The notes beneath the pieces are model-generated. The model had not been told where the DNA came from. It saw only the letters and a list, made by a program, of their open reading frames with translations, and did no database searches. Both the position numbers and the translations under genes were made by a program. A stretch of DNA of 64,000 nucleotides, from IMG/VR virus record IMGVR_UViG_3300034073_003340, positions 310,001 through 374,000 of that record, one strand, 5' to 3'. Below are positions 669 to 14,573 of the stretch, one piece after another; the first letter of the stretch is position 1, and each line of letters starts with the position of its first letter.

Positions 669-816
669 AGTTGAGGGCAAGTATCCGTATGGCATCTTTC
701 CGTTGCGTTTGCCAATTCCGCCACTTCCCGTCACAGAGTCGGGAAGCCAGGACTCGAACCTGGAAGACTAAAAGTCCACAGTTTTCTTTGATAAGCCAAA
801 CAATCGGCCCTCAACT
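669..816 (-). ncRNA. Y-RNA-like element A enclosing a permuted class II tRNA-like module
   Basis: AGTTGAGGGC-CGA...TTATC / CTTGCCCTCAACT; inside, T-arm plus CTTCCCG precede CGGGAAG plus D-arm. Confidence 0.75.
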
Positions 817-819
817 TTG

Positions 820-892
820 CGACCTATAGGGGAATCGAACCCCTCAAATTCCGCTAGACAGGCGGTTCTCTTTCCCAGCTGAGTCATAGGCC
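820..892 (-). tRNA. tRNA-Asp(GTC)
   Basis: Loop CT-GTC-TA, G73, CAA instead of CCA. Confidence 0.85.
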
Positions 893-1135
893 ATATGACA
901 CATTTTATGATGTGTAGCTATCAACAATCTTAGCAATTGCTCGATGTCTTTGTCTATATTCTTTTGCCGAAGCATTGGCTTCAAAATCCGTTGAATGGTA
1001 GGTTCCCATAACCAAGGTCCTACAATCCTCGCTGATCATAAACCATCGGAAGCGCCCACAAGGCTGAAGCAACACTTCGATCATTTTTCACCAATAATAT
1101 GAGTGGATTATGCTCATATTTACCTGGTGTTAGTT

Positions 1136-1274
1136 TCAACGGGCAAGTTGCGAAAAGGATGTTTTTCGGTGTCCTAACCACTAGACGAACCCCGCATAAT
1201 ATAGAGCGGGGTATGGGATTCGAACCCATGTAACCGGCGTGATAAGCGATAACCCTTATCAGTCGGCCCGTTGA
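1136..1274 (-). ncRNA. Y-RNA-like element B enclosing a permuted tRNA-Asp-like module (ATC)
   Basis: TCAACGGGC-CGA...GGGTTATC / CTTGCCCGTTGA; ACCCCGC and GCGGGGT form a 7-bp acceptor stem in reversed order. Confidence 0.8.
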
Positions 1275-1682
1275 TTATTTTGGATTGCGCATCATATCCA
1301 CTGCGCCGTCAACCTCATCTAAAACCTCGAAGCCATGCTTTTTATACCAAGCCACCAAAGCTTCAGTCGAGGTATCAGCATAACCATCGGCACTGAGTTT
1401 GATAGTCACGCCATGCTTGTCGGCGAGATCGCATATGGCGCGCAAAGCTTGGGTTCCGGAACCGGAGCCTGAGCCCTGTATATCACTTAAACGAATAGAG
1501 CTATTTCCTTGACCTCGGACTTCCACCTTGGCTGATCCAATAAGTCTCTGACGATGATTGAATGGACTCTCTTGTGAGATGCTATCAAGTTCATCAAGCA
1601 ACCTCTGAGTGGGAGAATCAGGATCAGGAGTGGTCTTCCCCAATTTTATGGTTAGCTCATTTGTGATTTCATTCCAGCGCAT
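1275..1682 (-). CDS. late protein with GNAT-like domain
   Basis: Start at MRWNEITNE after TAAATA; GSGTQALRAICDLAD...LVAWYKKHGF resembles a GNAT acetyl-CoA-binding motif. Confidence 0.55.
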   Translation of the reverse strand: MRWNEITNELTIKLGKTTPDPDSPTQRLLDELDSISQESPFNHRQRLIGSAKVEVRGQGNSSIRLSDIQGSGSGSGTQALRAICDLADKHGVTIKLSADGYADTSTEALVAWYKKHGFEVLDEVDGAVDMMRNPK

Positions 1683-1693
1683 GTTGTATTTAT

Positions 1694-1764
1694 TGGCGCT
1701 CCGAGTAGGATTCGAACCTACAATAGCAGTCTTAGGAGGACCGCTCCCATCCATTGGCCGGAGC
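1694..1764 (-). tRNA. tRNA-Arg(CCT), short D-arm
   Basis: Loop CT-CCT-AA, T-arm, CCA; only 71 nt. Confidence 0.8.
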
Positions 1765-2061
1765 ATCTTTCCAAGTCAACTTAAACAACATAGCGTCTTT
1801 GGGATCCACAAAGCTGAAGCCTCGACGATGATCATCTGTGTAAAGCTTATAGGTAAAATACTTGATCTTGCGCTCTTCCAGCCAGTTGATCAATATCATC
1901 CATATGGGAGGATCCGCATATGTGTCCAACACATCTATTTCCAACATAAAGGTGACCTGTAGTTTTTCCGCAAGATCACCTAGATTGGCACGATTGCGAT
2001 TGGCTCGTATTTTCATACGAGTGTGCATATAAGGATTATGTTTGAATGGGCCTTTGAACAT
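1732..2061 (-). CDS. small protein, DAxLFKLxW family
   Basis: ORF track; C-terminal FVDPKDAMLFKLTW; tail overlaps the tRNA-Arg gene. Confidence 0.7.
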   Translation of the reverse strand: MFKGPFKHNPYMHTRMKIRANRNRANLGDLAEKLQVTFMLEIDVLDTYADPPIWMILINWLEERKIKYFTYKLYTDDHRRGFSFVDPKDAMLFKLTWKDAPANGWERSS

Positions 2062-2066
2062 TCCTT

Positions 2067-2094
2067 ATTCTAACATAGAGTAGAGAAATGTCAA
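2067..2094 (-). promoter_or_regulatory. sigma70-like promoter
   Basis: TTGACA-N16-TAGAAT just upstream of ORF 2061. Confidence 0.5.
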
Positions 2095-2096
2095 CC

Positions 2097-2173
2097 TGGC
2101 GTCCTCGAGAGGATTCGAACCTCTGACCTGAAGATTAGAAGTCTCCTGCTCTATCCAGCTGAGCTACGAGGAC
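2097..2173 (-). tRNA. tRNA-Arg(TCT)
   Basis: Canonical cloverleaf, CT-TCT-AA, CCA. Confidence 0.95.
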
Positions 2174-2179
2174 ATCAAG

Positions 2180-2869
2180 TTATTTTCTTACGATGAATTC
2201 CTTGCTATTGCCGGAATTCGTAATCCACACTATTCGGTTACGATCAATTTCGCTAGAAAAAACTTCGGCCTTGTCCAAGATTTTTTGGTTATACTCTAGA
2301 GCCCATTTTCGATCACTCAAGAGATCTTTCTTCAGGTCGTCGCCATCTGTTATAAAGCTCTTTTTGGAATTATAGATATTGTAATATTCAGGGTGTTCCC
2401 GATTTCTCACATAATAGCGACCATCGACCTTTAAAAATCCAGACTCTTCGTATTTGGAAACCAGTTGATCGATTTCTTCTTCTGATTTGACTGGTTTTAA
2501 AAGCTCTCTCCAGTTACCCGACGTTCTCATACCAGCAAAATGTTCCGCTACCCTCTTGTCAGAGCTCCAGGATTCCAAGATACCCTTTTGCCAAGTGGTG
2601 TATGAACCATCCTTGATGATACCTCTGTAGAGTGAAACTTTAGGAGGCAATGATGCTCTCACAGGAGCAAAAGCTGCCTCAATCTCTTGAGCAATCTCAT
2701 CATTGGCCTTGATATGATTTACTAAATCACCTTCGGTCCAATTCACAGTTTCCCATAAATCAATAGCCGATTGAGCTTCACGACTAAGAGTCGAGTAAGC
2801 TTTCTTGGCCAGTCCAAACACATTGCTGATCGGGGCTTTTTCGAAGATTTCTTTGTAACGCATAGCCAT
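2180..2869 (-). CDS. ADP-ribosyltransferase-like late protein (R-S-E type)
   Basis: LYRG...SWSSD..VA..FA...KEFIV motifs; TATAAATA abuts the start; N-terminus MRYKEIFE. Confidence 0.6.
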   Translation of the reverse strand: MAMRYKEIFEKAPISNVFGLAKKAYSTLSREAQSAIDLWETVNWTEGDLVNHIKANDEIAQEIEAAFAPVRASLPPKVSLYRGIIKDGSYTTWQKGILESWSSDKRVAEHFAGMRTSGNWRELLKPVKSEEEIDQLVSKYEESGFLKVDGRYYVRNREHPEYYNIYNSKKSFITDGDDLKKDLLSDRKWALEYNQKILDKAEVFSSEIDRNRIVWITNSGNSKEFIVRK

Positions 2870-2894
2870 ATTTATAGGCTAGAAGCAAACGATA

Positions 2895-3593
2895 TCACGT
2901 ACCGACTACAAAAACATCAACAGTCGTGTTAGCGTTCACCATGTTAAAAGTGGTGAGCAGACCTGAAACGTTCTGAGATTTCACATAACCTCGAATAGAG
3001 GTATTGGATGATTCCTGTCTAGATACGCTTACAAAGCATGAGTCATTGGCATTGATTCCAGATGACGCGTTTGGTCTAGCATTGGCACCAACAAACAATA
3101 CTGTTGTAAAATTGGCAGATGATATATCACAAGTCCAAACACCGTTACTGGAGGCAACTGAACCTGTCCAGAATTTCACATTGGAATCTATTAGACCGCT
3201 TGATCCAAAAGGCGTAGAGTAGCCTTTTGGGCGTCCTATCACATTCCATTGTGAACCATTGTATACTAATGAAACACCGGAATAGTTAACATTGATTACC
3301 AAAGAGGATTCACCATCAATCAGTTTTCCGTTGCCCTGAATTGTGATGTTATGAACGGCCGCATTTCCGTTGCCGTCTTTTATCTTAATCATCTTTCCCG
3401 AAGATGGATCAGAGGGAAGATTGAGCACAGTGGGAGAATTTCTCGTCACCACTACCACTGAGTTGAGCATTGAAATCAAAGTAGGGGAAGTTGTCACGAT
3501 GGCAACATCAGCAAGAACGTTGGACAGATCAGCAAGAGCTTTTTCATCCAGTGTTTCTTCTAAATCTTTGATTTGCTTGATACGGACCTGCAC
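2895..3593 (-). CDS. putative virion structural or tail-fibre-like protein
   Basis: S/T/V/G/N-rich beta sequence; TITIxGNGxxIDG...LVYNGSQW-type module typical of fibre proteins. Confidence 0.5.
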   Translation of the reverse strand: MQVRIKQIKDLEETLDEKALADLSNVLADVAIVTTSPTLISMLNSVVVVTRNSPTVLNLPSDPSSGKMIKIKDGNGNAAVHNITIQGNGKLIDGESSLVINVNYSGVSLVYNGSQWNVIGRPKGYSTPFGSSGLIDSNVKFWTGSVASSNGVWTCDISSANFTTVLFVGANARPNASSGINANDSCFVSVSRQESSNTSIRGYVKSQNVSGLLTTFNMVNANTTVDVFVVGT

Positions 3594-3731
3594 CGTGTTT
3601 CCTCTATACTATAGGTGCGATATTTTGATTATCACACCAAGATAGAGTCAGGCTCCCAATATGTCAATATTAACCCTAGGTTAACCTATCCAAAGCTCGT
3701 CTTTTGACATATTATGTGATTTGAAAAGAAT

Positions 3732-3885
3732 AAGATCCAAGGCCGGATTCCACACCCCGGCTCCAACACGGTTACCGGGTTCTCTGCCCGGACCGTCAGC
3801 CCAACAAAGCAATCACTAGCCTTGGGGGTGAGGGCTCCGGAAACCCAACCTTATCCCAATATTCATTCATGCCTTCAAGGATCTT
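3732..3885 (-). ncRNA. unassigned structured RNA candidate
   Basis: Closed by AAGATCC/GGATCTT; shares GAATATTGGG and AAGGTTGGGT with 4406-4474. Confidence 0.4.
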
Positions 3886-3934
3886 GGTGCTTTCACTGAG
3901 AATCGAACTCAATTTGTAGCCAATCTACAGAAGC
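3885..3934 (-). pseudogene. 50-nt mini-tRNA (acceptor, one arm, T-arm, CCA)
   Basis: GCTTCTGTAG start is identical to tRNA-Ile at 13161; TTCGATT T-loop; ACCA end. Confidence 0.5.
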
Positions 3935-3981
3935 ATAGTCATGAGCAGGTGGGTCAGCTTTTCAACTGACCCACCGCATGA

Positions 3982-4068
3982 TTAGATAATCATGAACAGA
4001 TGGTTGAGGATGATTGAGATCAGATATCCCAGCATCGCTTCAACGATCACGCGAATAATACACGCCAT
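3982..4068 (-). CDS. 28-aa hydrophobic peptide
   Basis: AAGGAGG SD, MACIIRVIVEAMLGYLISIILNHLFMII*. Confidence 0.6.
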   Translation of the reverse strand: MACIIRVIVEAMLGYLISIILNHLFMII

Positions 4069-4115
4069 CTTAGCACCTCCTTGAGGTTGCTACATCCGTT
4101 AAAACCTAACAAGAA

Positions 4116-4148
4116 TCAACGGATGTAAATTGTTTTAACATACATCAT
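4116..4148 (-). CDS. 10-aa leader peptide (uORF)
   Basis: AAGGAG SD, MMYVKTIYIR*; the ORF end forms one arm of a 10-bp hairpin. Confidence 0.4.
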   Translation of the reverse strand: MMYVKTIYIR

Positions 4149-4319
4149 TGTTTTCTCCTTTTTTAGGCTTCGTGATGATCTAGAGGGTAAATTACCCTCT
4201 AAGGCACAACCACGAGTCGTGCTTAGCCTTCGCTATTAATGAGTTGTTAGCCCCAACATAGCTACGATGTTACCATCGATTTCTTATCATACACAACTAA
4301 CTTTGTTGTGTCTATATTC

Positions 4320-4401
4320 TGGTGCTGACGGTGGGACTCGAACCCACGATGTGGTATGAGGCCTTACGAAAGCCTTGGAATCGCCGCTATCCGACATCAG
4401 C
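4320..4401 (-). tRNA. tRNA-Thr(CGT)
   Basis: AGGCT-TTCGTAA-GGCCT arm, extended variable loop, CCA. Confidence 0.8.
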
Positions 4402-4405
4402 AGAT

Positions 4406-4474
4406 TAGGACCCAATATTCATAGCGTCCCCGCTTTAGATGGGAGTGACCCAACCTTGCCCGCTTGGGGCCTTA
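4406..4474 (-). ncRNA. unassigned small structured RNA candidate
   Basis: AGGCCCCAA/TTGGGTCCT closing stem; motifs shared with 3732-3885. Confidence 0.35.
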
Positions 4475-4477
4475 CCT

Positions 4478-4553
4478 TGGTGCCGGCACGAGGGATCGAA
4501 CCCCGGGCCTCAAGATTACAAATCTAGCGCTCTACCAACTGAGCTATACCGGC
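4478..4553 (-). tRNA. tRNA-Thr(TGT)
   Basis: Canonical, TT-TGT-AA, CCA. Confidence 0.92.
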
Positions 4554-4685
4554 ATGTGAGTGGTCCAATGTCTGTTGCCAGCACAGTCCCTTAGGGACTT
4601 CATTGGACCACTGATTTGTGTTTAACAAAAGTGGCCACCTTTGTCAAACTAAAACATTAGCCAGTACATCCGTGGTCTAATGTTT

Positions 4686-4756
4686 TGGAGCCCCAACTAG
4701 GATTCGAACCTAGCCTCCAGCGTTCGAAGCGCCGGGTCCCATCCATGGGCTGGGGC
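4686..4756 (-). tRNA. tRNA-Arg(TCG), short D-arm
   Basis: CGGCG-CTTCGAA-CGCTG arm, CCA, 71 nt. Confidence 0.82.
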
Positions 4757-4757
4757 A

Positions 4758-5054
4758 TTACGCCGGACAGCGATCAAAAACCAACTTGAACGCCATCGCA
4801 TGTCGTTTTTCCATGAACCAGATTTCCATCTGGTCACCTATACCTTCTTCTATTGGGGTATCAACCCAATAGTCGCCGCGTGGGCCAACCATTCTATTGA
4901 GCCATTCTTCAGTTTCTGGTTTCATCCAACGATGCCTAGTCAAGTATTGCTTGAGAGTCATTGTTGGATGATTTTTAAAAGGTTCATAGAATCGATCTGT
5001 TTCAGCTTCGGATAGTTCAAAAACGTATCCGCCTTCATCTTCATAAAGATTCAT
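4758..5054 (-). CDS. small protein, DAxLFKLxW family
   Basis: AGGAGG SD; C-terminal WFMEKRHAMAFKLVF. Confidence 0.75.
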   Translation of the reverse strand: MNLYEDEGGYVFELSEAETDRFYEPFKNHPTMTLKQYLTRHRWMKPETEEWLNRMVGPRGDYWVDTPIEEGIGDQMEIWFMEKRHAMAFKLVFDRCPA

Positions 5055-5105
5055 AAGTCACCTCCTACACCCAGATTATAACCAGGTGTAAGAGATGTCA
5101 ACACC

Positions 5106-5375
5106 TTACTTTTCAGAAAGTGGCTGAGTAGTGGCATATCGCAGCAAAGCGGTAATAATACCAACTACTGTCAGGATAACACCGCTATGCTCACCCATAA
5201 GGGCCTGCATCGAAGGCAAATAAATTTGAAGGGCGCCAAAAATAGTCAGTGCCGTTGAAAACCAAATCGTCTTAGACTTGGCCGCTTTGATTAGCCATGT
5301 CTTAGCGTTAATCCCCATTGCCTGAAGCATATCAAGATATGGGATAACATTTGGTTCTTTGCTTGGTTCAGTCAT
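5106..5375 (-). CDS. two-TM membrane protein, possibly holin-like
   Basis: Two hydrophobic segments, AAGGAG SD, TAAATA upstream. Confidence 0.5.
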   Translation of the reverse strand: MTEPSKEPNVIPYLDMLQAMGINAKTWLIKAAKSKTIWFSTALTIFGALQIYLPSMQALMGEHSGVILTVVGIITALLRYATTQPLSEK

Positions 5376-5418
5376 AGTCGATCTCCTTGTCAGAGTGTCG
5401 ACTATTTACCGCAATGGT

Positions 5419-5491
5419 ATATGGGCAAGTTGGTGGCCAGGGGCTTGGTTCAAAGTTTGAGTTTGATAACCCTGAGCCGTCCGGCCCATAT
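5419..5491 (-). ncRNA. Y-RNA-like element G (no tRNA module)
   Basis: ATATGGGC-CGG...GGGTTATC / CTTGCCCATAT. Confidence 0.7.
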
Positions 5492-5493
5492 TT

Positions 5494-5570
5494 TGGTTGC
5501 GGAGGACGGATTCGAACCGCCGACCTTTAGGTTATGAGCCTAACGAGCTACCAGGCTGCTCCACCCCGCG
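5494..5570 (-). tRNA. tRNA-fMet(CAT)
   Basis: C1:A72 mismatch, CT-CAT-AA, CCA. Confidence 0.92.
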
Positions 5571-5614
5571 TCAATACGATTAGCAAGAACTGTTTCTTGT
5601 GTCAATAATTTTTG

Positions 5615-9742: not shown

Positions 9743-9753
9743 ATGTAGAGACC

Positions 9754-9813
9754 TGAGCAAGTTGATGCGGCGAGGGGTTCATCACCAAAAGATAACCCTC
9801 ATGCTTCGGCTCA
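9754..9813 (-). ncRNA. Y-RNA-like element C (no tRNA module)
   Basis: TGAGC-CGA-AGCATGAGGG-TTATC...CCCTCG...CAACTTGCTCA. Confidence 0.7.
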
Positions 9814-9819
9814 AATCTA

Positions 9820-9895
9820 TGGCTCCGGAGGAGGGACTCGAACCCCCAACATCCTCGTTAACAGCGAGGCGCATCTACCATTGAGCTACTCCGGA
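9820..9895 (-). tRNA. tRNA-Asn(GTT)
   Basis: CT-GTT-AA, G73, CCA. Confidence 0.92.
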
Positions 9896-9899
9896 ATGA

Positions 9900-10015
9900 A
9901 TATGAGCAAGTTTTGTAAAGGACTTTCCCAGTTGCCTGGGGTGATGGATTTGAACCATCTAGTTTTGATTTGAAGTCAAAAGTTTTTCCGATAACCCTTT
10001 ACTATCGGCTCATAT
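9900..10015 (-). ncRNA. Y-RNA-like element D with a TCA anticodon arm, T-arm and loop-closed acceptor
   Basis: ATATGAGC-CGA...GGGTTATC / CTTGCTCATAT; TTTTGA-CTTCAAA-TCAAAA arm. Confidence 0.75.
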
Positions 10016-10088
10016 GGCGCCCTCGGGAGGATTCGAACCTACCTCATCTTCCCTTCGCAGGGGAAGTGCATGATCCACATGCGAGGGC
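10015..10088 (-). tRNA. tRNA-Arg(GCG), short D-arm
   Basis: TTCCC-CTGCGAA-GGGAA arm, CCA. Confidence 0.8.
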
Positions 10089-10093
10089 ATTAG

Positions 10094-10165
10094 TAGTCCC
10101 GTGGTGACTCGAACACCAATCCGCCCTTTATGAGAGGGTGGCACTAACCTTTGTGCTACAGGACC
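10094..10165 (-). tRNA. tRNA with CAT anticodon (Met or Ile2)
   Basis: CT-CAT-AA loop with paired position 1. Confidence 0.8.
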
Positions 10166-10168
10166 ATA

Positions 10169-10244
10169 TGGTGAACCGGGCGGGACTCGAACCCGCGACC
10201 AGCTGATTAAAAGTCAGCTGCTCTACCGACTGAGCTACCGGTCC
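10169..10244 (-). tRNA. tRNA-Lys(TTT)
   Basis: Canonical, CT-TTT-AA, CCA. Confidence 0.95.
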
Positions 10245-10300
10245 ACTCCAGCTCTCTTTAGCTAAAGATTTCCGTTAGTCAAAGATTTTTCTTACACCAA

Positions 10301-10753
10301 CTACTTTAAAATCACCGGTATGTTCATTTTCTTAGCCAGATCTTCAACCTGGTCTCGAAAATATTCATCATCGTCCTGTCCACCTTCGTCTCTTATCCAT
10401 ATCTCCTTGACTGTAGAGGAGTTTATTGGATAAAGAGGTGATGGTTCTATCACCGTTTCATCTTCGGGACGGGTCCCCAAAATGATTCGGACTTCATCCC
10501 AACGATCAACCACTTGCGTTTCAAAACCCTTGGGGGCTTTTAGCACAAATGTCACATTGGCTGAATTCTTTACACCACCAGAGAACCAAAGATTGGGATC
10601 AGTAGTGGTTGAAACAAAATATTCAACATTGCGATCATGGTCGATGTCGTCATAGCTGGTATGGATGCCACCGTCTCTTAATATTGAAAGGGCAGGCCTC
10701 ATATCAGTAGCATGATACAAAACACCGCCAGTCAAGACTTCATATAACCGCAT
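10301..10753 (-). CDS. ART-fold-like late protein
   Basis: LYHAT...SIL..GG...FVSTTTDP...DEVRI; TAAATA-N5-ATG; N-terminus MRLYEVL. Confidence 0.5.
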   Translation of the reverse strand: MRLYEVLTGGVLYHATDMRPALSILRDGGIHTSYDDIDHDRNVEYFVSTTTDPNLWFSGGVKNSANVTFVLKAPKGFETQVVDRWDEVRIILGTRPEDETVIEPSPLYPINSSTVKEIWIRDEGGQDDDEYFRDQVEDLAKKMNIPVILK

Positions 10754-10765
10754 ATCTGTATTTAT

Positions 10766-10841
10766 TGGTGGGAGCCGTGGGGATTGAACCCACCTCGTTC
10801 TGCTTGTAAAACAGATGTCATCACCAGATGGCTAGACTCCC
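10766..10841 (-). tRNA. tRNA-Val(TAC)
   Basis: TT-TAC-AA, CCA. Confidence 0.88.
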
Positions 10842-10842
10842 A

Positions 10843-10917
10843 TGGTAGTCGGTGAGGGTTTCGAACCCCCGACCCTCTCGGTGTAAACGAGATGCTCTAC
10901 CACTGAGCTAACCGACC
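10843..10917 (-). tRNA. tRNA-Val(TAC)
   Basis: TT-TAC-AC, CCA. Confidence 0.92.
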
Positions 10918-10957
10918 ATGTTATCAACATAAACAATCCTATTTGGAATGTCAATAT

Positions 10958-11040
10958 TGGTGGGAAGCAATGGAGTCGAACCATTCCCCGAAAGCGCGGT
11001 TTTACAGACCGCTTGCTAGAACCGCTAGCTTTTACTTCCC
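10958..11040 (-). tRNA. tRNA-Tyr(GTA)
   Basis: GCGGT-CTGTAAA-ACCGC, CCA. Confidence 0.88.
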
Positions 11041-11054
11041 ATATTTGTAATCAG

Positions 11055-11126
11055 TAGCGCGGACGGGAATCGAACCCGCTTACACCTGGGTGAAAACCAA
11101 GCCGCCTGCCATTAGCGTTCCGCGCC
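11055..11126 (-). tRNA. tRNA-Glu(TTC)
   Basis: TT-TTC-AC loop; CCA not encoded. Confidence 0.8.
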
Positions 11127-11137
11127 ATGAAGTATTG

Positions 11138-11209
11138 TGACCCATAGGGGGATCGAACCCCTGTTCTCGCCTTGAAAGGGCGCGCTCTTAACCATTAGAG
11201 GAATGGGCC
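11138..11209 (-). tRNA. tRNA-Glu(TTC)
   Basis: CT-TTC-AA loop; ends CAA. Confidence 0.88.
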
Positions 11210-11240
11210 GTGTGGGCAAATACCCTGCTGACTTACAGCT

Positions 11241-11315
11241 TGGTGGACGATACAGGGATTGAACCTGTGACCTTTCCCATGTCAAGGGAACGCGCTACCG
11301 CTGCGCCAATCGTCC
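11241..11315 (-). tRNA. tRNA-Val(GAC)
   Basis: TTCCC-TTGACAT-GGGAA, CCA. Confidence 0.92.
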
Positions 11316-11318
11316 ATA

Positions 11319-11984
11319 TCAAGCAAACAAGGAATTTTTTGCTTGAATCTTATTACCATTTGAATCAATACCTGGATACCCGTGATTCTGTAAAATCACA
11401 TGGGCCGCTGCCTTGAGACGCAACCTCGGGAAATCTTTGGTATAGAGGATCAAAGAGTAGGTTAGCTTTTCTTCACAACCGCCACCTGATCCAGTATTGA
11501 TTCCGATCCTTTTTAGGTGGTCAGAATGAATTAAATGCTTTCGGTAAACATTTCCTTTGGGGCGAATTATAATCTTGCCCTCCCAACCCGCTTCCGGAAC
11601 GTGGGGTGACTCACTACTCCAACCAGTTTCTTTCTGACCAATAGGAGAAGTGTGGGTCGTTGGACAAAGTGGGTTGAAGTTCAAATTTGAGATTTCAAAT
11701 TCAACATAATCACTAGCGGTTGGATAATAGGGATTTTTAGCTTCCCAACGTGGTCCAAAGTGTATGGCGATCTTCATGTAATTGGCTGTCAGCCACTCCG
11801 CAATTGCGTTAGTGGTATCCAGACAATACAAAGACTTCAAAAACTCATCGAACTCAAGAGCCAACTTGGACTGTTCGCGCTTGAAGCGCAAATCAAAACG
11901 AGTTCGCTTCAAGTGCTCAGCATATTCACTGGAGCACTCAAAAAGCTTACCGGTCCAAGGGCACTTGTTAACAATTACCTTCAT
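11319..11984 (-). CDS. hypothetical protein
   Basis: 221-aa ORF filling the gap between tRNAs. Confidence 0.75.
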   Translation of the reverse strand: MKVIVNKCPWTGKLFECSSEYAEHLKRTRFDLRFKREQSKLALEFDEFLKSLYCLDTTNAIAEWLTANYMKIAIHFGPRWEAKNPYYPTASDYVEFEISNLNFNPLCPTTHTSPIGQKETGWSSESPHVPEAGWEGKIIIRPKGNVYRKHLIHSDHLKRIGINTGSGGGCEEKLTYSLILYTKDFPRLRLKAAAHVILQNHGYPGIDSNGNKIQAKNSLFA

Positions 11985-12020
11985 GCCAACTGAGTAGCAT
12001 AAAAAGACCAGTTGTCAACA

Positions 12021-12107
12021 TGGTTGCAGAGGTGGGATTTGAACCCACGTAGCCTTTCGGCAGCCTCGGTTATGAGCCGAGCGAGATAACCACTCCTCTA
12101 CCCTGCG
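12021..12107 (-). tRNA. initiator-like tRNA(CAT) with a long variable arm
   Basis: C1:A72, CT-CAT-AA, GCC-GAAA-GGC variable stem, CCA. Confidence 0.8.
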
Positions 12108-12109
12108 AG

Positions 12110-12182
12110 TGCAACCAGTTGGAATCGAACCAACGACACGCGCATTTTCAGTGCGCTGCTCTACCTGCTGAGCTATGGTTAC
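12110..12182 (-). tRNA. tRNA-Phe(GAA)
   Basis: GCGCA-CTGAAAA-TGCGC. Confidence 0.9.
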
Positions 12183-12183
12183 A

Positions 12184-12259
12184 TGGACCTAACAGGGGCA
12201 TTTCAGCCCTCACTTTCTGACCAGCGTGGCGGTCAGCCGTGCCTCTTACACTAGTTAGG
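12184..12259 (-). pseudogene. tRNA-like RNA, 8-nt anticodon loop, non-canonical T-loop
   Basis: CCTAAC/GTTAGG acceptor, CTGACC-GCCACGCT-GGTCAG, CCA. Confidence 0.5.
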
Positions 12260-12262
12260 ATT

Positions 12263-12339
12263 TGGTGCCGACACCTGGAATCGAACCAGGAAAATCACCC
12301 TTATGAGAGGTAATAGGAGACCGCCTCCTTCCTACCGGC
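12263..12339 (-). tRNA. tRNA with CAT anticodon (Met or Ile2)
   Basis: CT-CAT-AA, CCA. Confidence 0.78.
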
Positions 12340-12345
12340 AAAGTT

Positions 12346-12420
12346 TGGCACGGGTGGAGGGATTCGAACCCTCTCTGCATGGTTTTGGAGACCAGCCGAC
12401 TACCAGTATCATACACCCAT
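12346..12420 (-). tRNA. tRNA-Trp(CCA)
   Basis: CT-CCA-AA, G73, CCA. Confidence 0.88.
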
Positions 12421-12435
12421 ATGAAAGATTTTTAG

Positions 12436-12506
12436 CAGGGCCAGTAGGAATCGAACCCACAAGAGCTGGTTTGGAGCCAACCATGATACCATTTCATCAT
12501 AACCCT
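12436..12506 (-). tRNA. tRNA-Trp(CCA)
   Basis: CT-CCA-AA, G73. Confidence 0.85.
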
Positions 12507-12529
12507 ATAGGTCAGAAAAGCTGACACAG

Positions 12530-12598
12530 TGGAAGCCTGGGATTTGAACCCACCAAACGGCTTTTATTCACCGTCATGCACCAAAACATCTGGCCCCC
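12530..12598 (-). pseudogene. tRNA-like RNA, Ala-type acceptor, 8-nt loop
   Basis: GGGGGCC/GGCTTCC-A, ACGGT-GAATAAAA-GCCGT, TTCAAAT T-loop. Confidence 0.5.
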
Positions 12599-12626
12599 AT
12601 GGAGGACGGATAGTAATCCGTCTTTG

Positions 12627-12697
12627 CGCAGCATGGGGGAATCGAACCCACCACCTCCAGGATTCCGCCTGGTATGCTAAACCTACAACATAGCCGC
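12627..12697 (-). pseudogene. tRNA-like RNA, 6-nt anticodon loop (Pro-like)
   Basis: CCAGG-CGGAAT-CCTGG, TTCGATT T-loop, imperfect acceptor. Confidence 0.45.
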
Positions 12698-12698
12698 A

Positions 12699-12783
12699 TG
12701 GTGGGTAGGTGCGGAATCGAACCACTCCCCGAAGGATCTGATTTACAGTCAGACTGCCGTATCCAAGACGACTTTACCTACCC
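12699..12783 (-). tRNA. tRNA-Tyr(GTA)
   Basis: TCTGA-CTGTAAA-TCAGA, variable arm, CCA. Confidence 0.88.
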
Positions 12784-12787
12784 ATAG

Positions 12788-12867
12788 AGGACCAGGTGGG
12801 ACTCGAACCCACGATGTATAATAGCCGGTTAAAAGCCGACGCCGATCGCCGCTACGGTGACTGGTCC
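12788..12867 (-). tRNA. tRNA-Lys(TTT)
   Basis: CT-TTT-AA, extended variable loop. Confidence 0.8.
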
Positions 12868-12873
12868 AAAGAT

Positions 12874-12951
12874 TGGTCAGGGTGAGAGGACTCGAACCTC
12901 CACGATGTCCTCCTTCCAAAGGAGACGACTTACCAATTAGTCCACACCCTG
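12874..12951 (-). tRNA. tRNA-Pro(TGG)
   Basis: TT-TGG-AA, C1-G72, CCA. Confidence 0.9.
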
Positions 12952-13087
12952 ATGTGGTCAAGACTTGCTAGATATATTGCTGTCCCGCATGGGACACCTG
13001 CCCGTCGGGGAGTCGAACCCTTCCGGTTGGGGACTTGAACCCCGCTTCACCCTAGCACCTACCCACTCGGTAGCTTTCGCTAAGTCT

Positions 13088-13161
13088 TGGTGCTTCAGCA
13101 AGGAATCGAACCTTGGTCGTGCCATTATCAGTGGCGTGCTCTACCATTGAGCTACAGAAGC
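13088..13161 (-). tRNA. tRNA-Ile(GAT)
   Basis: CT-GAT-AA, CCA. Confidence 0.92.
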
Positions 13162-13166
13162 ATGAT

Positions 13167-13294
13167 CGATGAGCAAGGAGGTGTGCTAGGAGATTGACTA
13201 GGTCCTACCCCGGCCCTCATTGTGGACCGGCCGAGACTCGAACTCGGATCGTTTGTTTCACAGACAAAGATAACCTAACGCTATCGGCTCATCG
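13167..13294 (-). ncRNA. Y-RNA-like element E enclosing a permuted tRNA-His-like module (GTG)
   Basis: CGATGAGC-CGA...GGTTATC / CTTGCTCATCG; TTTGT-CTGTGAA-ACAAA arm, T-arm, CCGGTCC then GGGCCGG. Confidence 0.8.
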
Positions 13295-13295
13295 G

Positions 13296-13378
13296 TGCGG
13301 ATGACTGGACTCGAACCAGCACGCCACTAGGGCACCGCCTTCTGAGGACGGCAAGTCTACCAATTTCATCACATCCGC
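13296..13378 (-). tRNA. tRNA-Leu(CAG)
   Basis: CT-CAG-AA, long variable arm. Confidence 0.9.
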
Positions 13379-13400
13379 ATGTAAAAGGCTTGTGAACCTT

Positions 13401-13477
13401 TGGTGCTCCCCGTGGGACTCGAACCCACACTGAACGGAGTTTGAACCCGCTGACTCTACCAATTGGCCTAGAGGAGC
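13401..13477 (-). tRNA. tRNA-Leu(CAA), short variable arm
   Basis: TT-CAA-AC, CCA. Confidence 0.85.
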
Positions 13478-13496
13478 ATGACACTGGCTAACAGCT

Positions 13497-13581
13497 TGGT
13501 GCGGATAGTGGGACTCGAACCCACACGCCCTAAGGCACAGGCCTCTCATGCCTGCAAGTCTACCAGTTTCATCATATCCGC
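13497..13581 (-). tRNA. tRNA-Leu(GAG)
   Basis: AT-GAG-AG, long variable arm, CCA. Confidence 0.88.
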
Positions 13582-13652
13582 ATAGTCAACAAAGTGTCAA
13601 TATTAACGACCTTTACTCTTACCTCCCGGAACGGTCAAGCGGGCGACTTTGT

Positions 13653-13727
13653 TGGTGCCCCATCCAAGAATCGAACTTGGATCTACGCCTTACCAAGGCG
13701 TTATAATAACCATTATAATAATGGGGC
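13653..13727 (-). tRNA. tRNA-Thr(GGT)
   Basis: ACGCC-TTGGTAA-GGCGT, CCA. Confidence 0.92.
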
Positions 13728-13728
13728 A

Positions 13729-13803
13729 TGGAGCAGGTAGAGGGGATCGAACCCTCTTCTACGGTTTGGAAGACCATCATAATAACCAATATACTATACC
13801 TGC
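13729..13803 (-). tRNA. tRNA-Gly(TCC)
   Basis: CT-TCC-AA, U73, CCA. Confidence 0.9.
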
Positions 13804-13804
13804 A

Positions 13805-13881
13805 TGGTGTCCATGGAGAGATTCGAACTCTCACTGTCTGCATTCTAAGCGCAGTGCCTCTTCCGATTGGGCTACATGGAC
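13805..13881 (-). tRNA. tRNA-Leu(TAG), short variable arm
   Basis: CT-TAG-AA, CCA. Confidence 0.88.
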
Positions 13882-13882
13882 A

Positions 13883-13980
13883 TGGCAGAGAGCAGAGGAC
13901 TTGAACCTCAAGCGCATGTAGGGGTAAATGGCGCTCACATGATTTTCATCAGCCCAGCGACCTCGCTGGTTTTACTCTCT
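13883..13980 (-). tRNA. Ser-like tRNA (TGA uncertain), degenerate anticodon arm
   Basis: G73, CCA, very long variable arm, 7-bp D-stem; anticodon loop does not fit 7 nt. Confidence 0.5.
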
Positions 13981-13981
13981 A

Positions 13982-14058
13982 TGGTAGATGATCAGGGGTT
14001 CGAACCCTGGACCTACGGTTTAAGAGACCGTCGCTACTACCAACTGAGCTAATCATCC
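13982..14058 (-). tRNA. tRNA-Lys(CTT)
   Basis: ACGGT-CTCTTAA-ACCGT, CCA. Confidence 0.92.
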
Positions 14059-14180
14059 ATAAGGGGCGCCACTAGCTTGTTCGTTTCCCTGGCGTGCCAT
14101 GGCGCCCAGCCAACAGCACTAGGGAGAAACCTTGCTTAAGGGTTTCGTAAGCATTGCCCCGTCCGACAATACTTGGAACT

Positions 14181-14254
14181 TGGATGCCCATCGAGGATTC
14201 GAACCTCGGTTGACCGGTTCAGAGCCGGGTCTCTTACCGTTAGAGGAATGGGCA
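14181..14254 (-). tRNA. tRNA-Gln(CTG)
   Basis: CT-CTG-AA, CCA. Confidence 0.9.
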
Positions 14255-14268
14255 ATAAGAGATAAAGT

Positions 14269-14342
14269 TGGTAGCCCCAACGGGGATCGAACCCGTTTCG
14301 CCGCCTTGAGAGGGCAGCAGCTTACCAATAGAAGATGGGGCC
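14269..14342 (-). tRNA. tRNA-Glu(CTC)
   Basis: CT-CTC-AA, CCA. Confidence 0.88.
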
Positions 14343-14343
14343 A

Positions 14344-14431
14344 TGGAGGACCAGGTGGGGTTCGAACCCACAAGGGACTTTCATCCGTCGCATTAAGAGT
14401 GCGGTGAGCCAACCAACTGCTCAACTGGTCC
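14344..14431 (-). tRNA. tRNA-Lys(CTT) with a long variable arm
   Basis: CT-CTT-AA, GGA-TGAAAG-TCC variable stem, CCA. Confidence 0.8.
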
Positions 14432-14436
14432 ATGAT

Positions 14437-14573
14437 CAACGGGCAAGTGGTGAAAAGGATGTTTTTCCCGGCTTTACCAATTTGCCTATCCCCCGTCAAT
14501 GGTCGGGGGAGGAGGACTTGAACCTCCAAACAGGGTCTCCTAATGACGATAACCCTTATCAATCGGCCCGTTG
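14437..14573 (-). ncRNA. Y-RNA-like element F enclosing a permuted tRNA-Leu-like module (TAG)
   Basis: CAACGGGC-CGA...GGGTTATC / CTTGCCCGTTG; TCCCCCG-A-CCA-TTGA-CGGGGGA. Confidence 0.8.

What the first reader, a model, noticed from the sequence alone, without database searches (positions are those of the whole stretch)
669..14573. Seven Y-RNA-like scaffolds in the tRNA array, five carrying circularly permuted tRNAs
Seen: seven minus-strand elements (669-816, 1136-1274, 5419-5491, 9754-9813, 9900-10015, 13167-13294, 14437-14573) share one frame: terminal stem, GCCG(A/G), 9-11 nt, TTATC, a variable insert, then CTTGC and the complementary stem. The stems covary between copies. In five, the insert is a tRNA whose T-arm and 3' acceptor strand come before the 5' acceptor strand. 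Established: this frame matches Y RNAs as I recall them (human Y1: GGUCCGA-N10-UUAUC...CUUGA), whose bulged lower stem binds Ro60/Rsr. Bacterial YrlA RNAs are tRNA mimics, and some phages encode them. Inference: this phage carries a diversified repertoire made by fusing one Ro-binding module to different tRNAs at different positions while keeping anticodon sequences. They could be anticodon-nuclease decoys, adaptors that address Ro60-nuclease complexes, or precursors that are cut and ligated into tRNAs. No Ro60/TROVE gene is visible in this window.
Basis: partly seen in the sequence, partly recalled or inferred. Interest (0 to 1): 0.93.

Follow-up and report, generated by a model that had tools for sequence, protein, structure and literature searches.

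The report
Phage Y RNAs hidden among tRNAs
A 436-kb phage carries seven small RNA genes inside its tRNA gene cluster that have the binding frame for the RNA-surveillance protein Ro60; they are members of the known Y RNA / YrlA family, in a place and in forms that have not been described.

Summary
Seven minus-strand elements share one frame: an 8-bp terminal stem, a bulged C, GA, an upper stem, (G)GUUAUC, an insert, then CUUGC and the complementary stem. A relaxed search finds exactly seven in the window and none in a reversed control.

The frame defines a large phage family, with 134 covariance-model matches in 132 fetched loci. Fifteen of 16 stem pairs show compensatory changes. Of 120 loci fetched by the 5' motif alone, 44 carry a Ro60 (TROVE) gene, usually directly downstream. 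The window's own genome encodes Ro60 140-295 kb away, with an eighth Y RNA beside it.

The "permuted tRNA" is the standard YrlA layout: T arm, closed acceptor stem, D arm. The claim of retained anticodons fails. Hairpins shaped like anticodon arms exist, but their triplets differ between sister phages and no module matches a tRNA in this window.

Apparently undescribed features:
- Y RNAs packed into tRNA arrays far from Ro60.
- A conserved seven-type repertoire.
- CCA encoded in the acceptor loop.
- C-U-NNN-A-A loops.

Verdict: a new variant of a known kind. Ro60 binding is inferred, not shown.

The parts
669..816 (-). E1: long Y RNA-like element with a class II (tRNA-Leu-like) tRNA mimic
   Evidence: Coordinates:
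- lower stem 807-815 / 670-678
- upper stem 795-801 / 687-693
- UUAUC 790-794 (here GGCUUAUC)
- anticodon-stem analogue CUGU 778-781 / ACGG 700-703
- variable-arm hairpin 765-777
- T arm 747-763
- 7-bp acceptor stem 740-746 / 724-730, closed by loop 731-739
- D arm GCGGAAUUGGCAAACGC 705-721

Orthologues in L012, L049 and L011 show compensatory changes in the anticodon-stem analogue. The short-class model R1 missed this element. Rfam YrlA scores 17.2 bits here.
1136..1274 (-). E2: long Y RNA-like element, YrlA layout, with a Glu/Asp-type D arm
   Evidence: Coordinates:
- lower stem 1266-1273 / 1137-1144
- upper stem 1254-1260 / 1152-1158
- UUAUC 1248-1252
- mini-hairpin with a 7-nt loop 1237-1247
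- anticodon-stem analogue 1233-1236 / 1167-1170
- T arm 1213-1229
- acceptor stem 1206-1212 / 1189-1195
- D arm 1171-1186
- AAAACAU 1159-1165

R1 scores 32.2 bits. The Rfam sbRNA model scores 25.3 bits.
5419..5491 (-). E3: short Y RNA-like element, made of the Y module plus one hairpin
   Evidence: Coordinates:
- lower stem 5484-5491 / 5419-5426
- upper stem 5470-5478 / 5435-5442
- UUAUC 5465-5469
- hairpin 5450-5466, with a 5-bp stem and loop CUCAAAC

R1 scores 53.6 bits. It matches Rfam RF01656 (nematode sbRNA) end to end at 31.0 bits. It starts 2 nt after the CCA of tRNA-Met 5494-5570.
9751..9816 (-). E4: short Y RNA-like element
   Evidence: The hairpin UUAUC-UUUUGGU-GAUGA lies at 9779-9795 and the upper stem at 9796-9800 / 9772-9776. 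R1 scores 63.3 bits. E4 lies between tRNA-Asn 9820-9895 and tRNA-Gln 9669-9742. It is the only copy with the full GNCGAAG motif.
9900..10015 (-). E5: Y module with an anticodon-arm-like hairpin, a T arm and a capped 5-bp stem, but no D arm
   Evidence: Coordinates:
- lower stem 10008-10015 / 9900-9907
- 7-bp upper stem 9996-10002 / 9915-9921
- hairpin 9963-9981, loop CUUCAAA
- T arm 9943-9959
- GCAA-capped stem 9927-9940

The Rfam tRNA model scores 28.5 bits over 9943-9996, model positions 9-63. Orthologues in L102 and L107 carry the loop triplets UAU and CAU.
13167..13294 (-). E6: Y module with a full cloverleaf-like body that includes an anticodon-arm-like hairpin
   Evidence: Coordinates:
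- lower stem 13287-13294 / 13167-13174
- upper stem 13274-13279 / 13185-13190
- hairpin 13252-13268 (UUUGU-CUGUGAA-ACAAA)
- 4-nt linker
- T arm 13231-13247
- acceptor stem 13224-13230 / 13210-13216
- D-like region 13191-13209

ARAGORN miscalls 13222-13298 as tRNA-His(gtg). Orthologues in L017, L060 and L107 keep the hairpin stem and the CU..AA loop flanks but carry GCA, UUG and UGA.
14437..14573 (-). E7: long Y RNA-like element, YrlA layout, with A-CCA encoded at the start of the acceptor loop
   Evidence: Coordinates:
- lower stem 14566-14573 / 14437-14444
- upper stem 14554-14560 / 14452-14458
- UUAUC 14548-14552
- mini-hairpin 14535-14547, loop AUUAGGA
- T arm 14511-14527
- 7-bp acceptor stem 14504-14510 / 14489-14495
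- acceptor loop ACCAUUGA 14496-14503
- D arm 14470-14486
- AAAACAU 14459-14465

It aligns end to end with Rfam YrlA at 23.2 bits. Its first two bases are the CA of the CCA of tRNA-Pro 14572-14648. tRNA-Lys starts 5 nt after its 3' end.
484..16031 (-). tRNA gene array, about 50 genes, that holds all seven elements
   Evidence: ARAGORN genes, one of which is E6 miscalled as a tRNA. Rfam tRNA matches agree. CCA is encoded in 38 of the 50. The elements sit from -2 to a few nt away from neighbouring tRNAs on the same strand.

Best explanation
The seven elements are phage Y RNAs: small non-coding RNAs whose paired 5' and 3' ends form the docking site for a Ro60 (Rsr/TROVE) ring protein.

They fall into three groups:
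- E3 and E4 are minimal, YrlB-like forms. They have the Y module plus one hairpin.
- E1, E2, E6 and E7 are YrlA-type forms. Their variable module is a tRNA mimic with a T arm, a closed 7-bp acceptor stem and a D arm.
- E5 is a reduced version.

Proposed working, with inferred steps marked:
1. They are transcribed with the tRNA array. They are released by the enzymes that mature the flanking tRNAs, RNase P and the 3' trimming enzymes. This is inferred from spacings of -2 to +5 nt on the same strand.
2. The conserved lower stem, bulged C and GCCGA bind the Ro60 protein that the same phage encodes 140-295 kb away. This is inferred from motif identity with known Ro60 sites and from gene neighbourhood in relatives.
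3. The variable modules recruit or imitate tRNA-handling factors. The known Ro60 models suggest an exoribonuclease such as PNPase, or tRNA-binding enzymes. The seven RNAs would then give one Ro60 several specificities for RNA surveillance or tRNA turnover during infection. This is inferred by analogy.
4. Elements with a 7-bp acceptor stem, above all E7 with its encoded ACCA, are probably nicked by RNase P. That would leave a CCA 3' end, as shown for Mycobacterium smegmatis YrlA. This is inferred.
For: 1. The frame and its covariation are real: for chance controls, and for compensatory pairs.

2. The frame is Y-like. E3 scores 31.0 bits and E2 25.3 bits against the nematode sbRNA model. E7 scores 23.2 bits and E1 17.2 bits against YrlA, both over the full model length. 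GNCGA and YUAY are the two published YrlA motifs (PMC4201824). UUAUC is the published sbRNA/Y motif.

3. Guilt by association. Of 120 IMG/VR loci fetched with the 5' motif only, 44 hold a Pfam-confirmed TROVE plus vWA_Ro60 gene. The elements lie directly upstream on the same strand, often as arrays of 3-9.

4. The same genome encodes Ro60: TROVE 1.5e-40 and vWA_Ro60 1e-52. A 157-nt element with the identical frame lies about 700 nt upstream and is conserved in four relatives.

5. All four contigs larger than 430 kb that carry array elements, plus the cultured relative Sinorhizobium phage Phosso, also encode Ro60 far from the array.

6. A known mycobacteriophage Ro locus has the same GCCGAAG...GGUUAUC element.

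7. Each of the seven types has orthologues in at least one, mostly three or more, of the related genomes.

8. N73-CCA opens the acceptor loop in 13 of 27 parsed long elements, binomial P about 5e-17. There is a precedent: M. smegmatis YrlA is cut by RNase P, gains CCA, and both halves stay on Rsr (PMC4201824).

9. Phage Ro60 binds phage Yrl RNAs and host PNPase in Thermus phage phiLo (PMC12135203).
Against: - No binding, expression or processing data exist for these RNAs.
- No element reaches an Rfam gathering score: 69 for YrlA and 38 for RF01656. RF00019 (Y_RNA) never appears at E up to 10. However, the accepted mycobacteriophage YrlA also reaches only 37.4 bits.
- Six of the seven copies have U, C or G where the YrlA motif has its second A.
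- The seven are not within 4 kb of Ro60, which was the operational criterion of the defining study.
- The role of the tRNA-like module is unknown even in the model organisms, so step 3 is analogy.
- The anticodon-arm-like hairpins are not explained by this account.
Confidence: 0.72

Rival explanations
1. Anticodon-arm baits. The 7-nt-loop hairpins (C-U-NNN-A-A on a 3-6-bp stem) are the working part. A Ro60-docked set of anticodon-stem-loop mimics would soak up, sense or redirect host tRNA-targeting defence nucleases or tRNA-modifying enzymes. The variable triplet would be the specificity determinant, evolving in an arms race.
For: - Among 125 distinct elements, 7 nt is the commonest loop size of the hairpin after UUAUC (35 cases). 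Those loops have C at position 1 in 25 of 35, U at position 2 in 26, A at position 6 in 27 and A at position 7 in 20. That is the anticodon-loop signature.
- In the E5 and E6 types, the hairpin, a 4-nt linker, the T arm and the acceptor 3' strand keep canonical tRNA spacing.
- The triplet differs in every orthologue while the stem and loop flanks stay fixed.
- The elements live in tRNA arrays. Phage tRNA arrays are proposed to counter tRNA-cleaving defences (PMC10264068, PMC11555353).
Against: - A variable triplet inside a conserved U-turn loop is also what absence of constraint would produce.
- Only about a quarter of family members have such a loop. E1 has none.
- The hairpin stems do not copy those of tRNAs in this window.
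- The position is topologically the same as the known 'V' stem-loop of YrlA (PMC4201824).
- No nuclease partner has been identified.
Confidence: 0.12
2. Permuted or split tRNA precursors. The Y-like helix would only hold the two tRNA halves together. It would be excised and the halves ligated, for example by RtcB, while the acceptor loop is opened by RNase P and 3' trimming. The product would be functional tRNAs.
For: - The 3' half comes before the 5' half.
- Acceptor stems are 7 bp, and N73-CCA is encoded in many acceptor loops.
- The location is a tRNA array.
- E5 and E6 have complete anticodon-arm-like hairpins.
Against: - E1, E2 and E7 have only a 2-4-bp anticodon-stem analogue and no anticodon loop at the junction.
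- E3 and E4 have no tRNA body, yet they carry the same conserved module.
- E5 lacks a D arm.
- The junction helix carries the sequence-conserved Ro60 frame, not a bulge-helix-bulge splice motif.
- Orthologues do not keep an anticodon identity. A decoding tRNA would.
- The same module occurs next to Ro60 with a non-tRNA insert.
Confidence: 0.04
3. Decaying relics of tandem tRNA duplications, or cis-acting processing spacers of the polycistronic tRNA transcript, with no function in trans.
For: - The elements sit exactly between tRNAs.
- Their architecture reads like tRNA number 1 (anticodon arm to CCA), a spacer, then tRNA number 2 (acceptor 5' strand and D arm). This matches the published dimeric-tRNA origin model for YrlA (bioRxiv 10.1101/312249).
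- Tandem identical tRNAs exist in the array, namely Glu, Val and Trp pairs.
Against: - Compensatory changes maintain both Y stems, the acceptor stem, the T arm and the hairpins across genomes whose proteins are only 50-75% identical.
- The invariant GCCGA, GGUUAUC and CUUGC motifs are unrelated to tRNA.
- The seven types are retained as orthologous sets.
- The family is tightly linked to Ro60 genes.
Confidence: 0.05

Closest known systems
YrlA / YrlB bacterial and phage Y RNAs (Chen et al. 2014, PMC4201824; Rfam RF02553; structure in bioRxiv 10.1101/312249)
   Same: - A terminal helix with a GNCGA motif on the 5' strand.
- YUAY (here UUAU) opening the variable region.
- An optional 'V' hairpin.
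- A T arm 5' of the D arm, with a closed acceptor-like stem between them.
- Short partner RNAs without a full tRNA body (YrlB-like, as E3 and E4).
- Several copies per genome.
- Presence in phages that encode Ro60.
- The M. smegmatis member, with a 7-bp acceptor stem, is cut by RNase P and gains CCA.
   Different: - The seven lie in a tRNA array 140-295 kb from Ro60, not within 4 kb of it.
- Both strands of the Ro60-site helix are conserved, as in animals and Deinococcus. In Salmonella and Mycobacterium YrlA only the 5' strand is recognisable.
- The tRNA modules are of several kinds: class II Leu-like, Glu/Asp-like, one without a D arm, and some with a 5-bp/7-nt anticodon-arm-like hairpin at canonical spacing. 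YrlA is described as lacking the anticodon loop.
- CCA is often genome-encoded inside the acceptor loop.
- Scores stay far below the Rfam threshold.
Metazoan Y RNAs and nematode stem-bulge RNAs (Rfam RF00019, RF01656; PMC4450293, PMC4726728)
   Same: - A lower stem with a bulged C (GGNCCGR on the 5' strand, CUUGNCC on the 3' strand).
- A variable upper stem.
- UUAUC at the 5' start of the loop domain.
- E3 also shares CACCAACUUG with the sbRNA consensus.
   Different: - These are not RNA polymerase III genes.
- They have no 3' oligo-U tail.
- Their loop domains are tRNA-like.
- They are phage-encoded.
- They score below the gathering threshold, and RF00019 gives no hit.
Thermus phage phiLo Yrl1/Yrl2 with phage Ro60 (PMC12135203)
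   Same: Phage-encoded Y-like RNAs with a CGAA-type motif in a stem-bulge-stem. They bind the phage's own Ro60 and assemble with host PNPase.
   Different: The phiLo RNAs lie directly upstream of the Ro60 gene. There are two, not eight. No tRNA array context and no anticodon-arm-like hairpins are reported.
Circularly permuted tRNA genes of Cyanidioschyzon merolae and split tRNAs of Nanoarchaeum (from my own knowledge; permuted tRNAs are mentioned in bioRxiv 10.1101/312249)
   Same: The 3' half is encoded before the 5' half. The acceptor ends are joined by a short spacer. A helix formed by the transcript termini holds the halves together.
   Different: Those precursors have a bulge-helix-bulge splice site and give a normal tRNA with a conserved anticodon. 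Here the terminal helix is a conserved Ro60 site, the anticodon arm is mostly incomplete at the junction, and the triplets are not conserved.

Membership tests
YrlA-type Y RNA (Chen et al. 2014; RF02553) | GNCGAAN0-1G motif near the 5' end | tested here: inconclusive
   The core GNCGR is present in 7 of 7 copies (GCCGA in six, GCCGG in E3). The full motif is present only in E4 (GCCGAAG). E1, E5, E6 and E7 have GCCGAU and E2 has GCCGAC. The family-wide consensus is GCCGAAG.
YrlA-type Y RNA (Chen et al. 2014; RF02553) | Conserved YUAY at the start of the variable (V) region | tested here: met
   UUAUC is present in 7 of 7 copies and is invariant in the 36-sequence short-class alignment.
YrlA-type Y RNA (Chen et al. 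2014; RF02553) | tRNA-like domain with the T arm 5' of the D arm and a closed acceptor-like stem between them | tested here: met
   E1, E2 and E7 meet it clearly. E6 has a less regular D region. E5 has a T arm and a capped stem only. E3 and E4 have none and so resemble YrlB. E7 aligns to all 114 positions of the Rfam model.
YrlA-type Y RNA (Chen et al. 2014; RF02553) | Encoded within about 4 kb of a Ro60 gene, on the same strand | tested here: not met
   No TROVE gene lies in the 64-kb window. Ro60 is at contig positions 13,341-15,032, while the array is at about 310,484-326,031. The criterion is met by the eighth element (L181:5146-5302) and by the family at large: 44 of 120 loci.
YrlA-type Y RNA (Chen et al. 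2014; RF02553) | Reaches the Rfam gathering score (69 bits) | tested here: not met
   E7 scores 23.2 bits and E1 17.2 bits. The other copies are not listed. As a control, the YrlA of mycobacteriophage Sebata reaches only 37.4 bits.
YrlA-type Y RNA (Chen et al. 2014; RF02553) | Bound by Ro60/Rsr in vivo | not testable with these tools
   This needs pull-down or gel-shift experiments.
Metazoan Y RNA / nematode sbRNA (RF00019, RF01656) | Lower stem with a bulged C (GGUCCGA ... CUUGACC) and UUAUC at the 5' start of the loop | tested here: met
   The elements have G(G/A)GCCG(A/G) ... CUUGC(C/U)C with the C bulged, and UUAUC in all seven. The motif is described in PMC4450293.
Metazoan Y RNA / nematode sbRNA (RF00019, RF01656) | Reaches the Rfam gathering score | tested here: not met
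   Against RF01656, E3 scores 31.0 bits and E2 25.3 bits, with a gathering score of 38. RF00019 is not listed at E up to 10.
Metazoan Y RNA / nematode sbRNA (RF00019, RF01656) | Independent pol III gene with a 3' oligo-U tail | tested here: not met
   The elements are followed within a few nt by tRNA genes on the same strand, and there is no U run.
Circularly permuted tRNA gene | 3' half encoded upstream of the 5' half | tested here: met
   The order is T arm, acceptor 3' strand, loop, acceptor 5' strand, then D arm in E1, E2, E6 and E7.
Circularly permuted tRNA gene | Joining the termini restores a complete anticodon arm with a conserved anticodon (bulge-helix-bulge junction) | tested here: not met
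   E1, E2 and E7 have only a 2-4-bp stem analogue and no loop at the junction. The junction helix is the conserved Y frame. Triplets of the hairpins differ between orthologues.

The most novel reading that the evidence does not exclude
The huge-phage Y RNAs would be a programmable repertoire. One Ro60-docking module presents different tRNA bodies and anticodon-arm look-alikes, and the fast-changing triplets are specificity determinants. These RNAs would bait, sense or redirect host tRNA-targeting defence nucleases or tRNA enzymes onto a Ro60-nuclease particle. RNase P-opened, CCA-ended forms might even be aminoacylated. If so, Ro60 RNPs would be a counter-defence arm of phage tRNA arrays.
Probability: 0.12. 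Interest if true: 0.9.

Novelty: new variant of a known kind. Interest (0 to 1): 0.62.

Why it matters
- **Missed by design.** Phage Y RNAs are probably far more numerous and varied than the literature shows. The defining survey kept only hits within 4 kb of Ro60 and discarded anything overlapping tandem tRNA genes, so this class was excluded from the start.

- **Origin of Y RNAs.** The layout reads as anticodon arm, T arm, acceptor 3' strand, N73-CCA, short spacer, acceptor 5' strand, D arm. The elements sit among tandem tRNAs. This is what the dimeric-tRNA origin model for Y RNAs predicts, so these elements make that question testable.

- **Experimental access.** A cultured relative, Sinorhizobium phage Phosso, has the same arrangement. 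The unknown function of the tRNA-like Y RNA module can therefore be studied in a system with eight natural variants.

- **Annotation.** tRNA finders miscall several of these elements as tRNAs. That inflates tRNA and isoacceptor counts in huge-phage genomes.

Tried and rejected
- **No close relative in GenBank phages.** Megablast of 12-14 kb pieces against GenBank phages found only scattered tRNA-sized hits.

- **Modules as recent tRNA copies: rejected.** I tested whether the tRNA-like modules are recent copies of tRNAs in the window. The best local alignments reach only about 40-55% of the maximum score, mostly at about 30-50%. The 5' and 3' parts of one element point to different tRNAs.

- **More copies in the window: none found.** R1 with default filters finds E2-E7. 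R1 with filters off finds nothing new. The relaxed regular expression also finds nothing new. The three other motif hits, at 7685, 17953 and 53269, lack the 3' half. The first lies inside tRNA-Ile.

- **R1 near Ro60 genes of the huge phages: no hit**. A direct motif search then found the 157-nt Ro60-adjacent element, whose roughly 100-nt insert defeats the short-class model.

- **More orthologues of the E6 and E5 types.** The E6 pattern returned only the four already known. I did not examine the new loci returned by the T-arm pattern individually. R1 found no element in them.

- **First Ro60 search missed the window's contig.** The search using the Phosso protein alone did not find it. A profile of seven huge-phage Ro60s did.

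- **Two reviews not held.** PMC10870794 and PMC6047535 are not in the library.

- **Scans and models not run.** I ran no scan of metagenome or bacterial-genome collections. I built no long-class covariance model and ran no R-scape.

Full report
**1. The observation**

The first 16 kb of the window is a minus-strand array of about 50 tRNA genes. All share one frame:
- an 8-bp terminal helix, NNNNNGRGC paired with GCYCNNNNN
- an unpaired C followed by GA (GG in E3)
- a 5-9-bp upper stem of free sequence
- (G)GUUAUC
- an insert
- (A)CUUGC running into the 3' strand

The motif GCCGR-N8-12-TTATC occurs 10 times against 1.04 expected, and seven of those hits are the elements. A relaxed search for the whole frame returns exactly these seven. 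The reversed sequence returns nothing. A covariance model run with filters off finds no further copy in the 64 kb. The coordinates in the finding are right to within 3 nt.

**2. Where the window comes from**

The window is 100% identical to two IMG/VR loci. It corresponds to positions 310,001-374,000 of IMGVR_UViG_3300034073_003340, a 435,856-bp viral contig. By topoisomerase IV subunit A, its closest cultured relatives are:
- Sinorhizobium phage Phosso, 469 kb, 66% amino-acid identity
- Agrobacterium phage Atu_ph07, 490 kb, 56% identity

**3. A large family tied to Ro60**

A full-frame search found 88 elements in 43 sources (the window included), with 0 in the reversed control. I built a covariance model from 36 short elements. 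It found 134 matches at E up to 0.01 across the fetched loci and the window.

On 92 distinct aligned sequences, 81% of cells pair. This compares with 62% after shuffling and 32-54% with slid partners. Fifteen of 16 pairs have changes on both sides.

Many loci had an ORF of about 540 aa next to the elements. Eighteen of the 24 I sampled are TROVE plus vWA_Ro60 proteins. An HMM built from these finds Ro60 in 44 of the 120 loci. It is typically directly downstream of one to nine elements on the same strand.

The mycobacteriophage Sebata Ro locus belongs to a group already known to encode YrlA. It has a GCCGAAG...GGUUAUC element at L122 4862-4932.

The frame is therefore a marker of Ro60 loci.

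**4. Ro60 in this genome**

The window has no TROVE gene. A profile of seven huge-phage Ro60 proteins found one on the same contig at about 13,341-15,032. Pfam confirms it: TROVE 1.5e-40 and vWA_Ro60 1e-52. It lies beside the tail sheath gene, as in Phosso.

About 700 nt upstream lies an eighth element, L181:5146-5302. It has the same frame but a multi-hairpin insert of about 100 nt with no tRNA features. It is conserved in four relatives.

The other three contigs above 430 kb with array-embedded elements also encode Ro60 far from the array:
- 3300034072_000926
- 3300049044_000033
- 3300020156_000001

Phosso has its Ro-like gene at 290 kb. At least two unannotated short elements lie between tRNAs at 420.4 and 420.7 kb.

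**5. Comparison with curated RNA families**

| Element | Rfam family | Bits | Gathering score |
|---|---|---|---|
| E7 | YrlA, all 114 model positions | 23.2 | 69 |
| E1 | YrlA | 17.2 | 69 |
| E3 | RF01656, end to end | 31.0 | 38 |
| E2 | RF01656 | 25.3 | 38 |
| Sebata phage YrlA (control) | YrlA | 37.4 | 69 |

RF01656 (ceN72-3_ceN74-2) holds nematode stem-bulge RNAs, which are the nematode homologues of Y RNAs (PMC4726728, PMC4450293). Their consensus and E3 share GGNCCGG, GGGUUAUCA and CACCAACUUGNCC. UUAUC at the 5' start of the loop is a published hallmark of these RNAs.

RF00019 is never listed. The thresholds are not met. However, the accepted mycobacteriophage YrlA fails its threshold too, so this failure does not exclude membership.

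**6. Anatomy of the inserts**

- **E3 and E4** are the Y module plus one hairpin.
- **E1** has a class II, tRNA-Leu-like body. It has the D arm GCGGAAUUGGCAAACGC and a variable-arm hairpin. A 4-bp anticodon-stem analogue covaries with orthologues (ACGG/CUGU, GCGG/CUGC, GCGG/CCGC).
- **E2 and E7** follow the YrlA plan. Each has a 2-4-bp anticodon-stem analogue, a 4-5-nt variable loop, a T arm, a closed 7-bp acceptor stem and a D arm. Each also has a mini-hairpin with a 7-nt loop right after UUAUC, and a conserved AAAACAU before the 3' strand of the upper stem.
- **E6** has a 5-bp/7-nt hairpin, a 4-nt linker, a T arm and an acceptor 3' strand at canonical tRNA spacing. E5 has the same arrangement, with a 6-bp stem, a 3-nt linker and a capped 5-bp stem in place of the acceptor stem.
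  - Read this way, they are cloverleaves closed at the acceptor end and opened between the D arm and the anticodon arm.
  - Topologically this hairpin is the known 'V' stem-loop of YrlA. Only structure probing can say how it stacks.
- **E5** has no D arm. Its acceptor is a 5-bp stem capped by GCAA.

'T arm before D arm with a closed acceptor stem' is the published definition of YrlA. That RNA is described as lacking an anticodon loop.

**7. Are anticodons retained?**

Among 125 distinct elements, the best hairpin after UUAUC most often has a 7-nt loop (35 cases). The consensus is C-U-N-N-N-A-A. An anticodon-loop-like shape is therefore a recurrent family feature. It also appears in elements next to Ro60.

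The triplet is not conserved between orthologues:
- E6 type: GUG, GCA, UUG, UGA
- E5 type: UCA, UAU, CAU

In both types the hairpin stems and loop flanks are kept. No module resembles the cognate tRNA, or any tRNA, in the window. 'Keeping anticodon sequences' is not supported. The pattern fits either no constraint or diversifying selection.

**8. Signs of tRNA-type processing**

The elements abut tRNAs on the same strand:
- E7 starts inside the CCA of tRNA-Pro and ends 5 nt before tRNA-Lys.
- E3 starts 2 nt after a CCA.
- E6 starts at the last base of tRNA-Leu.

Of the 50 tRNA genes, 38 encode CCA. In 13 of 27 parsed long elements the acceptor loop begins N73-CCA, including E7 with ACCA. The binomial P is about 5e-17.

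M. smegmatis YrlA also has a 7-bp acceptor stem. It is cut by RNase P in vivo, receives CCA, and both halves stay on Rsr. The same fate is the natural prediction here.

**9. Conservation of the repertoire**

Each of the seven types has orthologues in the five related genomes, in at least one and mostly in three or more, and where the alignments cover the flanks, with the same neighbours. This argues that the paralogues are not redundant.

Array-embedded elements occur in at least eight IMG/VR contigs plus Phosso. One contig (L116) has five tRNAs, eight or nine elements and Ro60 within 5.5 kb, an intermediate arrangement.

**10. Interpretation**

The best-supported reading is that these are phage Y RNAs of the YrlA/YrlB kind.
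- Shown: they have moved into the tRNA array.
- Inferred: they are made and trimmed together with tRNAs and bound by the phage's own Ro60. They would give that protein several tRNA-like or hairpin adaptor modules. This follows Deinococcus and phiLo, where a Y RNA tethers Ro60 to PNPase.

The decoy or bait reading of the anticodon-like hairpins is not excluded and is the most novel option. The tRNA-precursor and relic readings fit poorly.

**11. Novelty**

Phage Y RNAs next to Ro60 are known (PMC4201824, PMC12135203). Jumbo-phage TROVE proteins have been noted (PMC7824862). My literature searches found nothing on Y RNAs inside phage tRNA arrays. The defining survey excluded such hits by design.

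I rate this a new variant of a known kind.

Noticed in passing
window 13222-13298 (-); L107 6510-6588; L060 6059-6135; L067 8386-8453; L018 4533-4602: ARAGORN calls parts of Y elements as tRNA genes, taking the anticodon from the hairpin loop. Examples are tRNA-His(gtg) over E6 and tRNA-Ser(tga) over orthologues. tRNA counts for huge phages may be inflated this way.
   Followed up: partly
L181:5146-5302 (+), which is contig IMGVR_UViG_3300034073_003340 about 15,731-15,887: An eighth Y RNA-like element lies about 700 nt upstream of the phage's Ro60 gene. It has the same terminal frame but a multi-hairpin insert of about 100 nt with no tRNA features. It is conserved in L180, L176, L177 and L135.
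   Followed up: partly
window 5612-5803 (-): There is a weak match to the tmRNA model (22 bits, E 1.9e-5) in the 257-nt gap between tRNA-Met and tRNA-Phe. ARAGORN calls no tmRNA there.
   Followed up: no
window 575-659, 8797-8871, 10962-11040, 13888-13979 (-); also 1697-1764 and 12627-12697: These are sub-threshold tRNA-Sec-model or tRNA-model matches. All but 8797-8871, which overlaps the called tRNA-Asp 8794-8870, lie in gaps of the array. They may be odd, long-armed or decaying tRNAs that ARAGORN does not call. The 77 nt upstream of E5 (10016-10092) are also unassigned.
   Followed up: no
window 4146-4221 (-): Weak match to the 'freshwater-2' RNA motif: 36.7 bits against a gathering score of 49.9.
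   Followed up: no
window 6991-7590, 8282-8692, 9008-9460, 18620-19060 (all -): ORFs lie inside or beside the tRNA array: a GIY-YIG (SegE-like) homing endonuclease, an ART-PolyVal ADP-ribosyltransferase-like domain, a 150-aa fragment resembling the histidyl-tRNA synthetase core, and an HNH endonuclease.
   Followed up: partly
window 17251-18078, 26774-27259, 34076-34708, 39377-40552, 51968-52543, 52544-53797 (all -): Host-like metabolism and translation genes are present: a metallophosphoesterase, an AAA_33 P-loop kinase (possibly a polynucleotide kinase), an HD domain protein, glutathionylspermidine synthase, translation initiation factor IF3 and ClpX. ClpS, S-adenosylmethionine decarboxylase and ADP-ribosylglycohydrolase are also detected somewhere in the window. 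NUDIX maps to 44471-45043.
   Followed up: partly
L011 11232-11471 (-): An orthologue of E1 carries an insertion of about 100 nt inside the acceptor loop, giving an element of 240 nt. So that loop tolerates large inserts.
   Followed up: no
L116 6690-11990 (+): One 97-kb viral contig has eight or nine Y elements, five tRNA genes and a Ro60 gene within about 5.5 kb. This is an intermediate between 'Y RNAs beside Ro60' and 'Y RNAs in the tRNA array'.
   Followed up: partly
L123 46731-46806 (Phosso) and L060 1481-1554: Relatives carry a tRNA with anticodon CUA, annotated or called as tRNA-Pyl. It is an amber-suppressor-like tRNA. None was called in the first 20 kb of this window.
   Followed up: no
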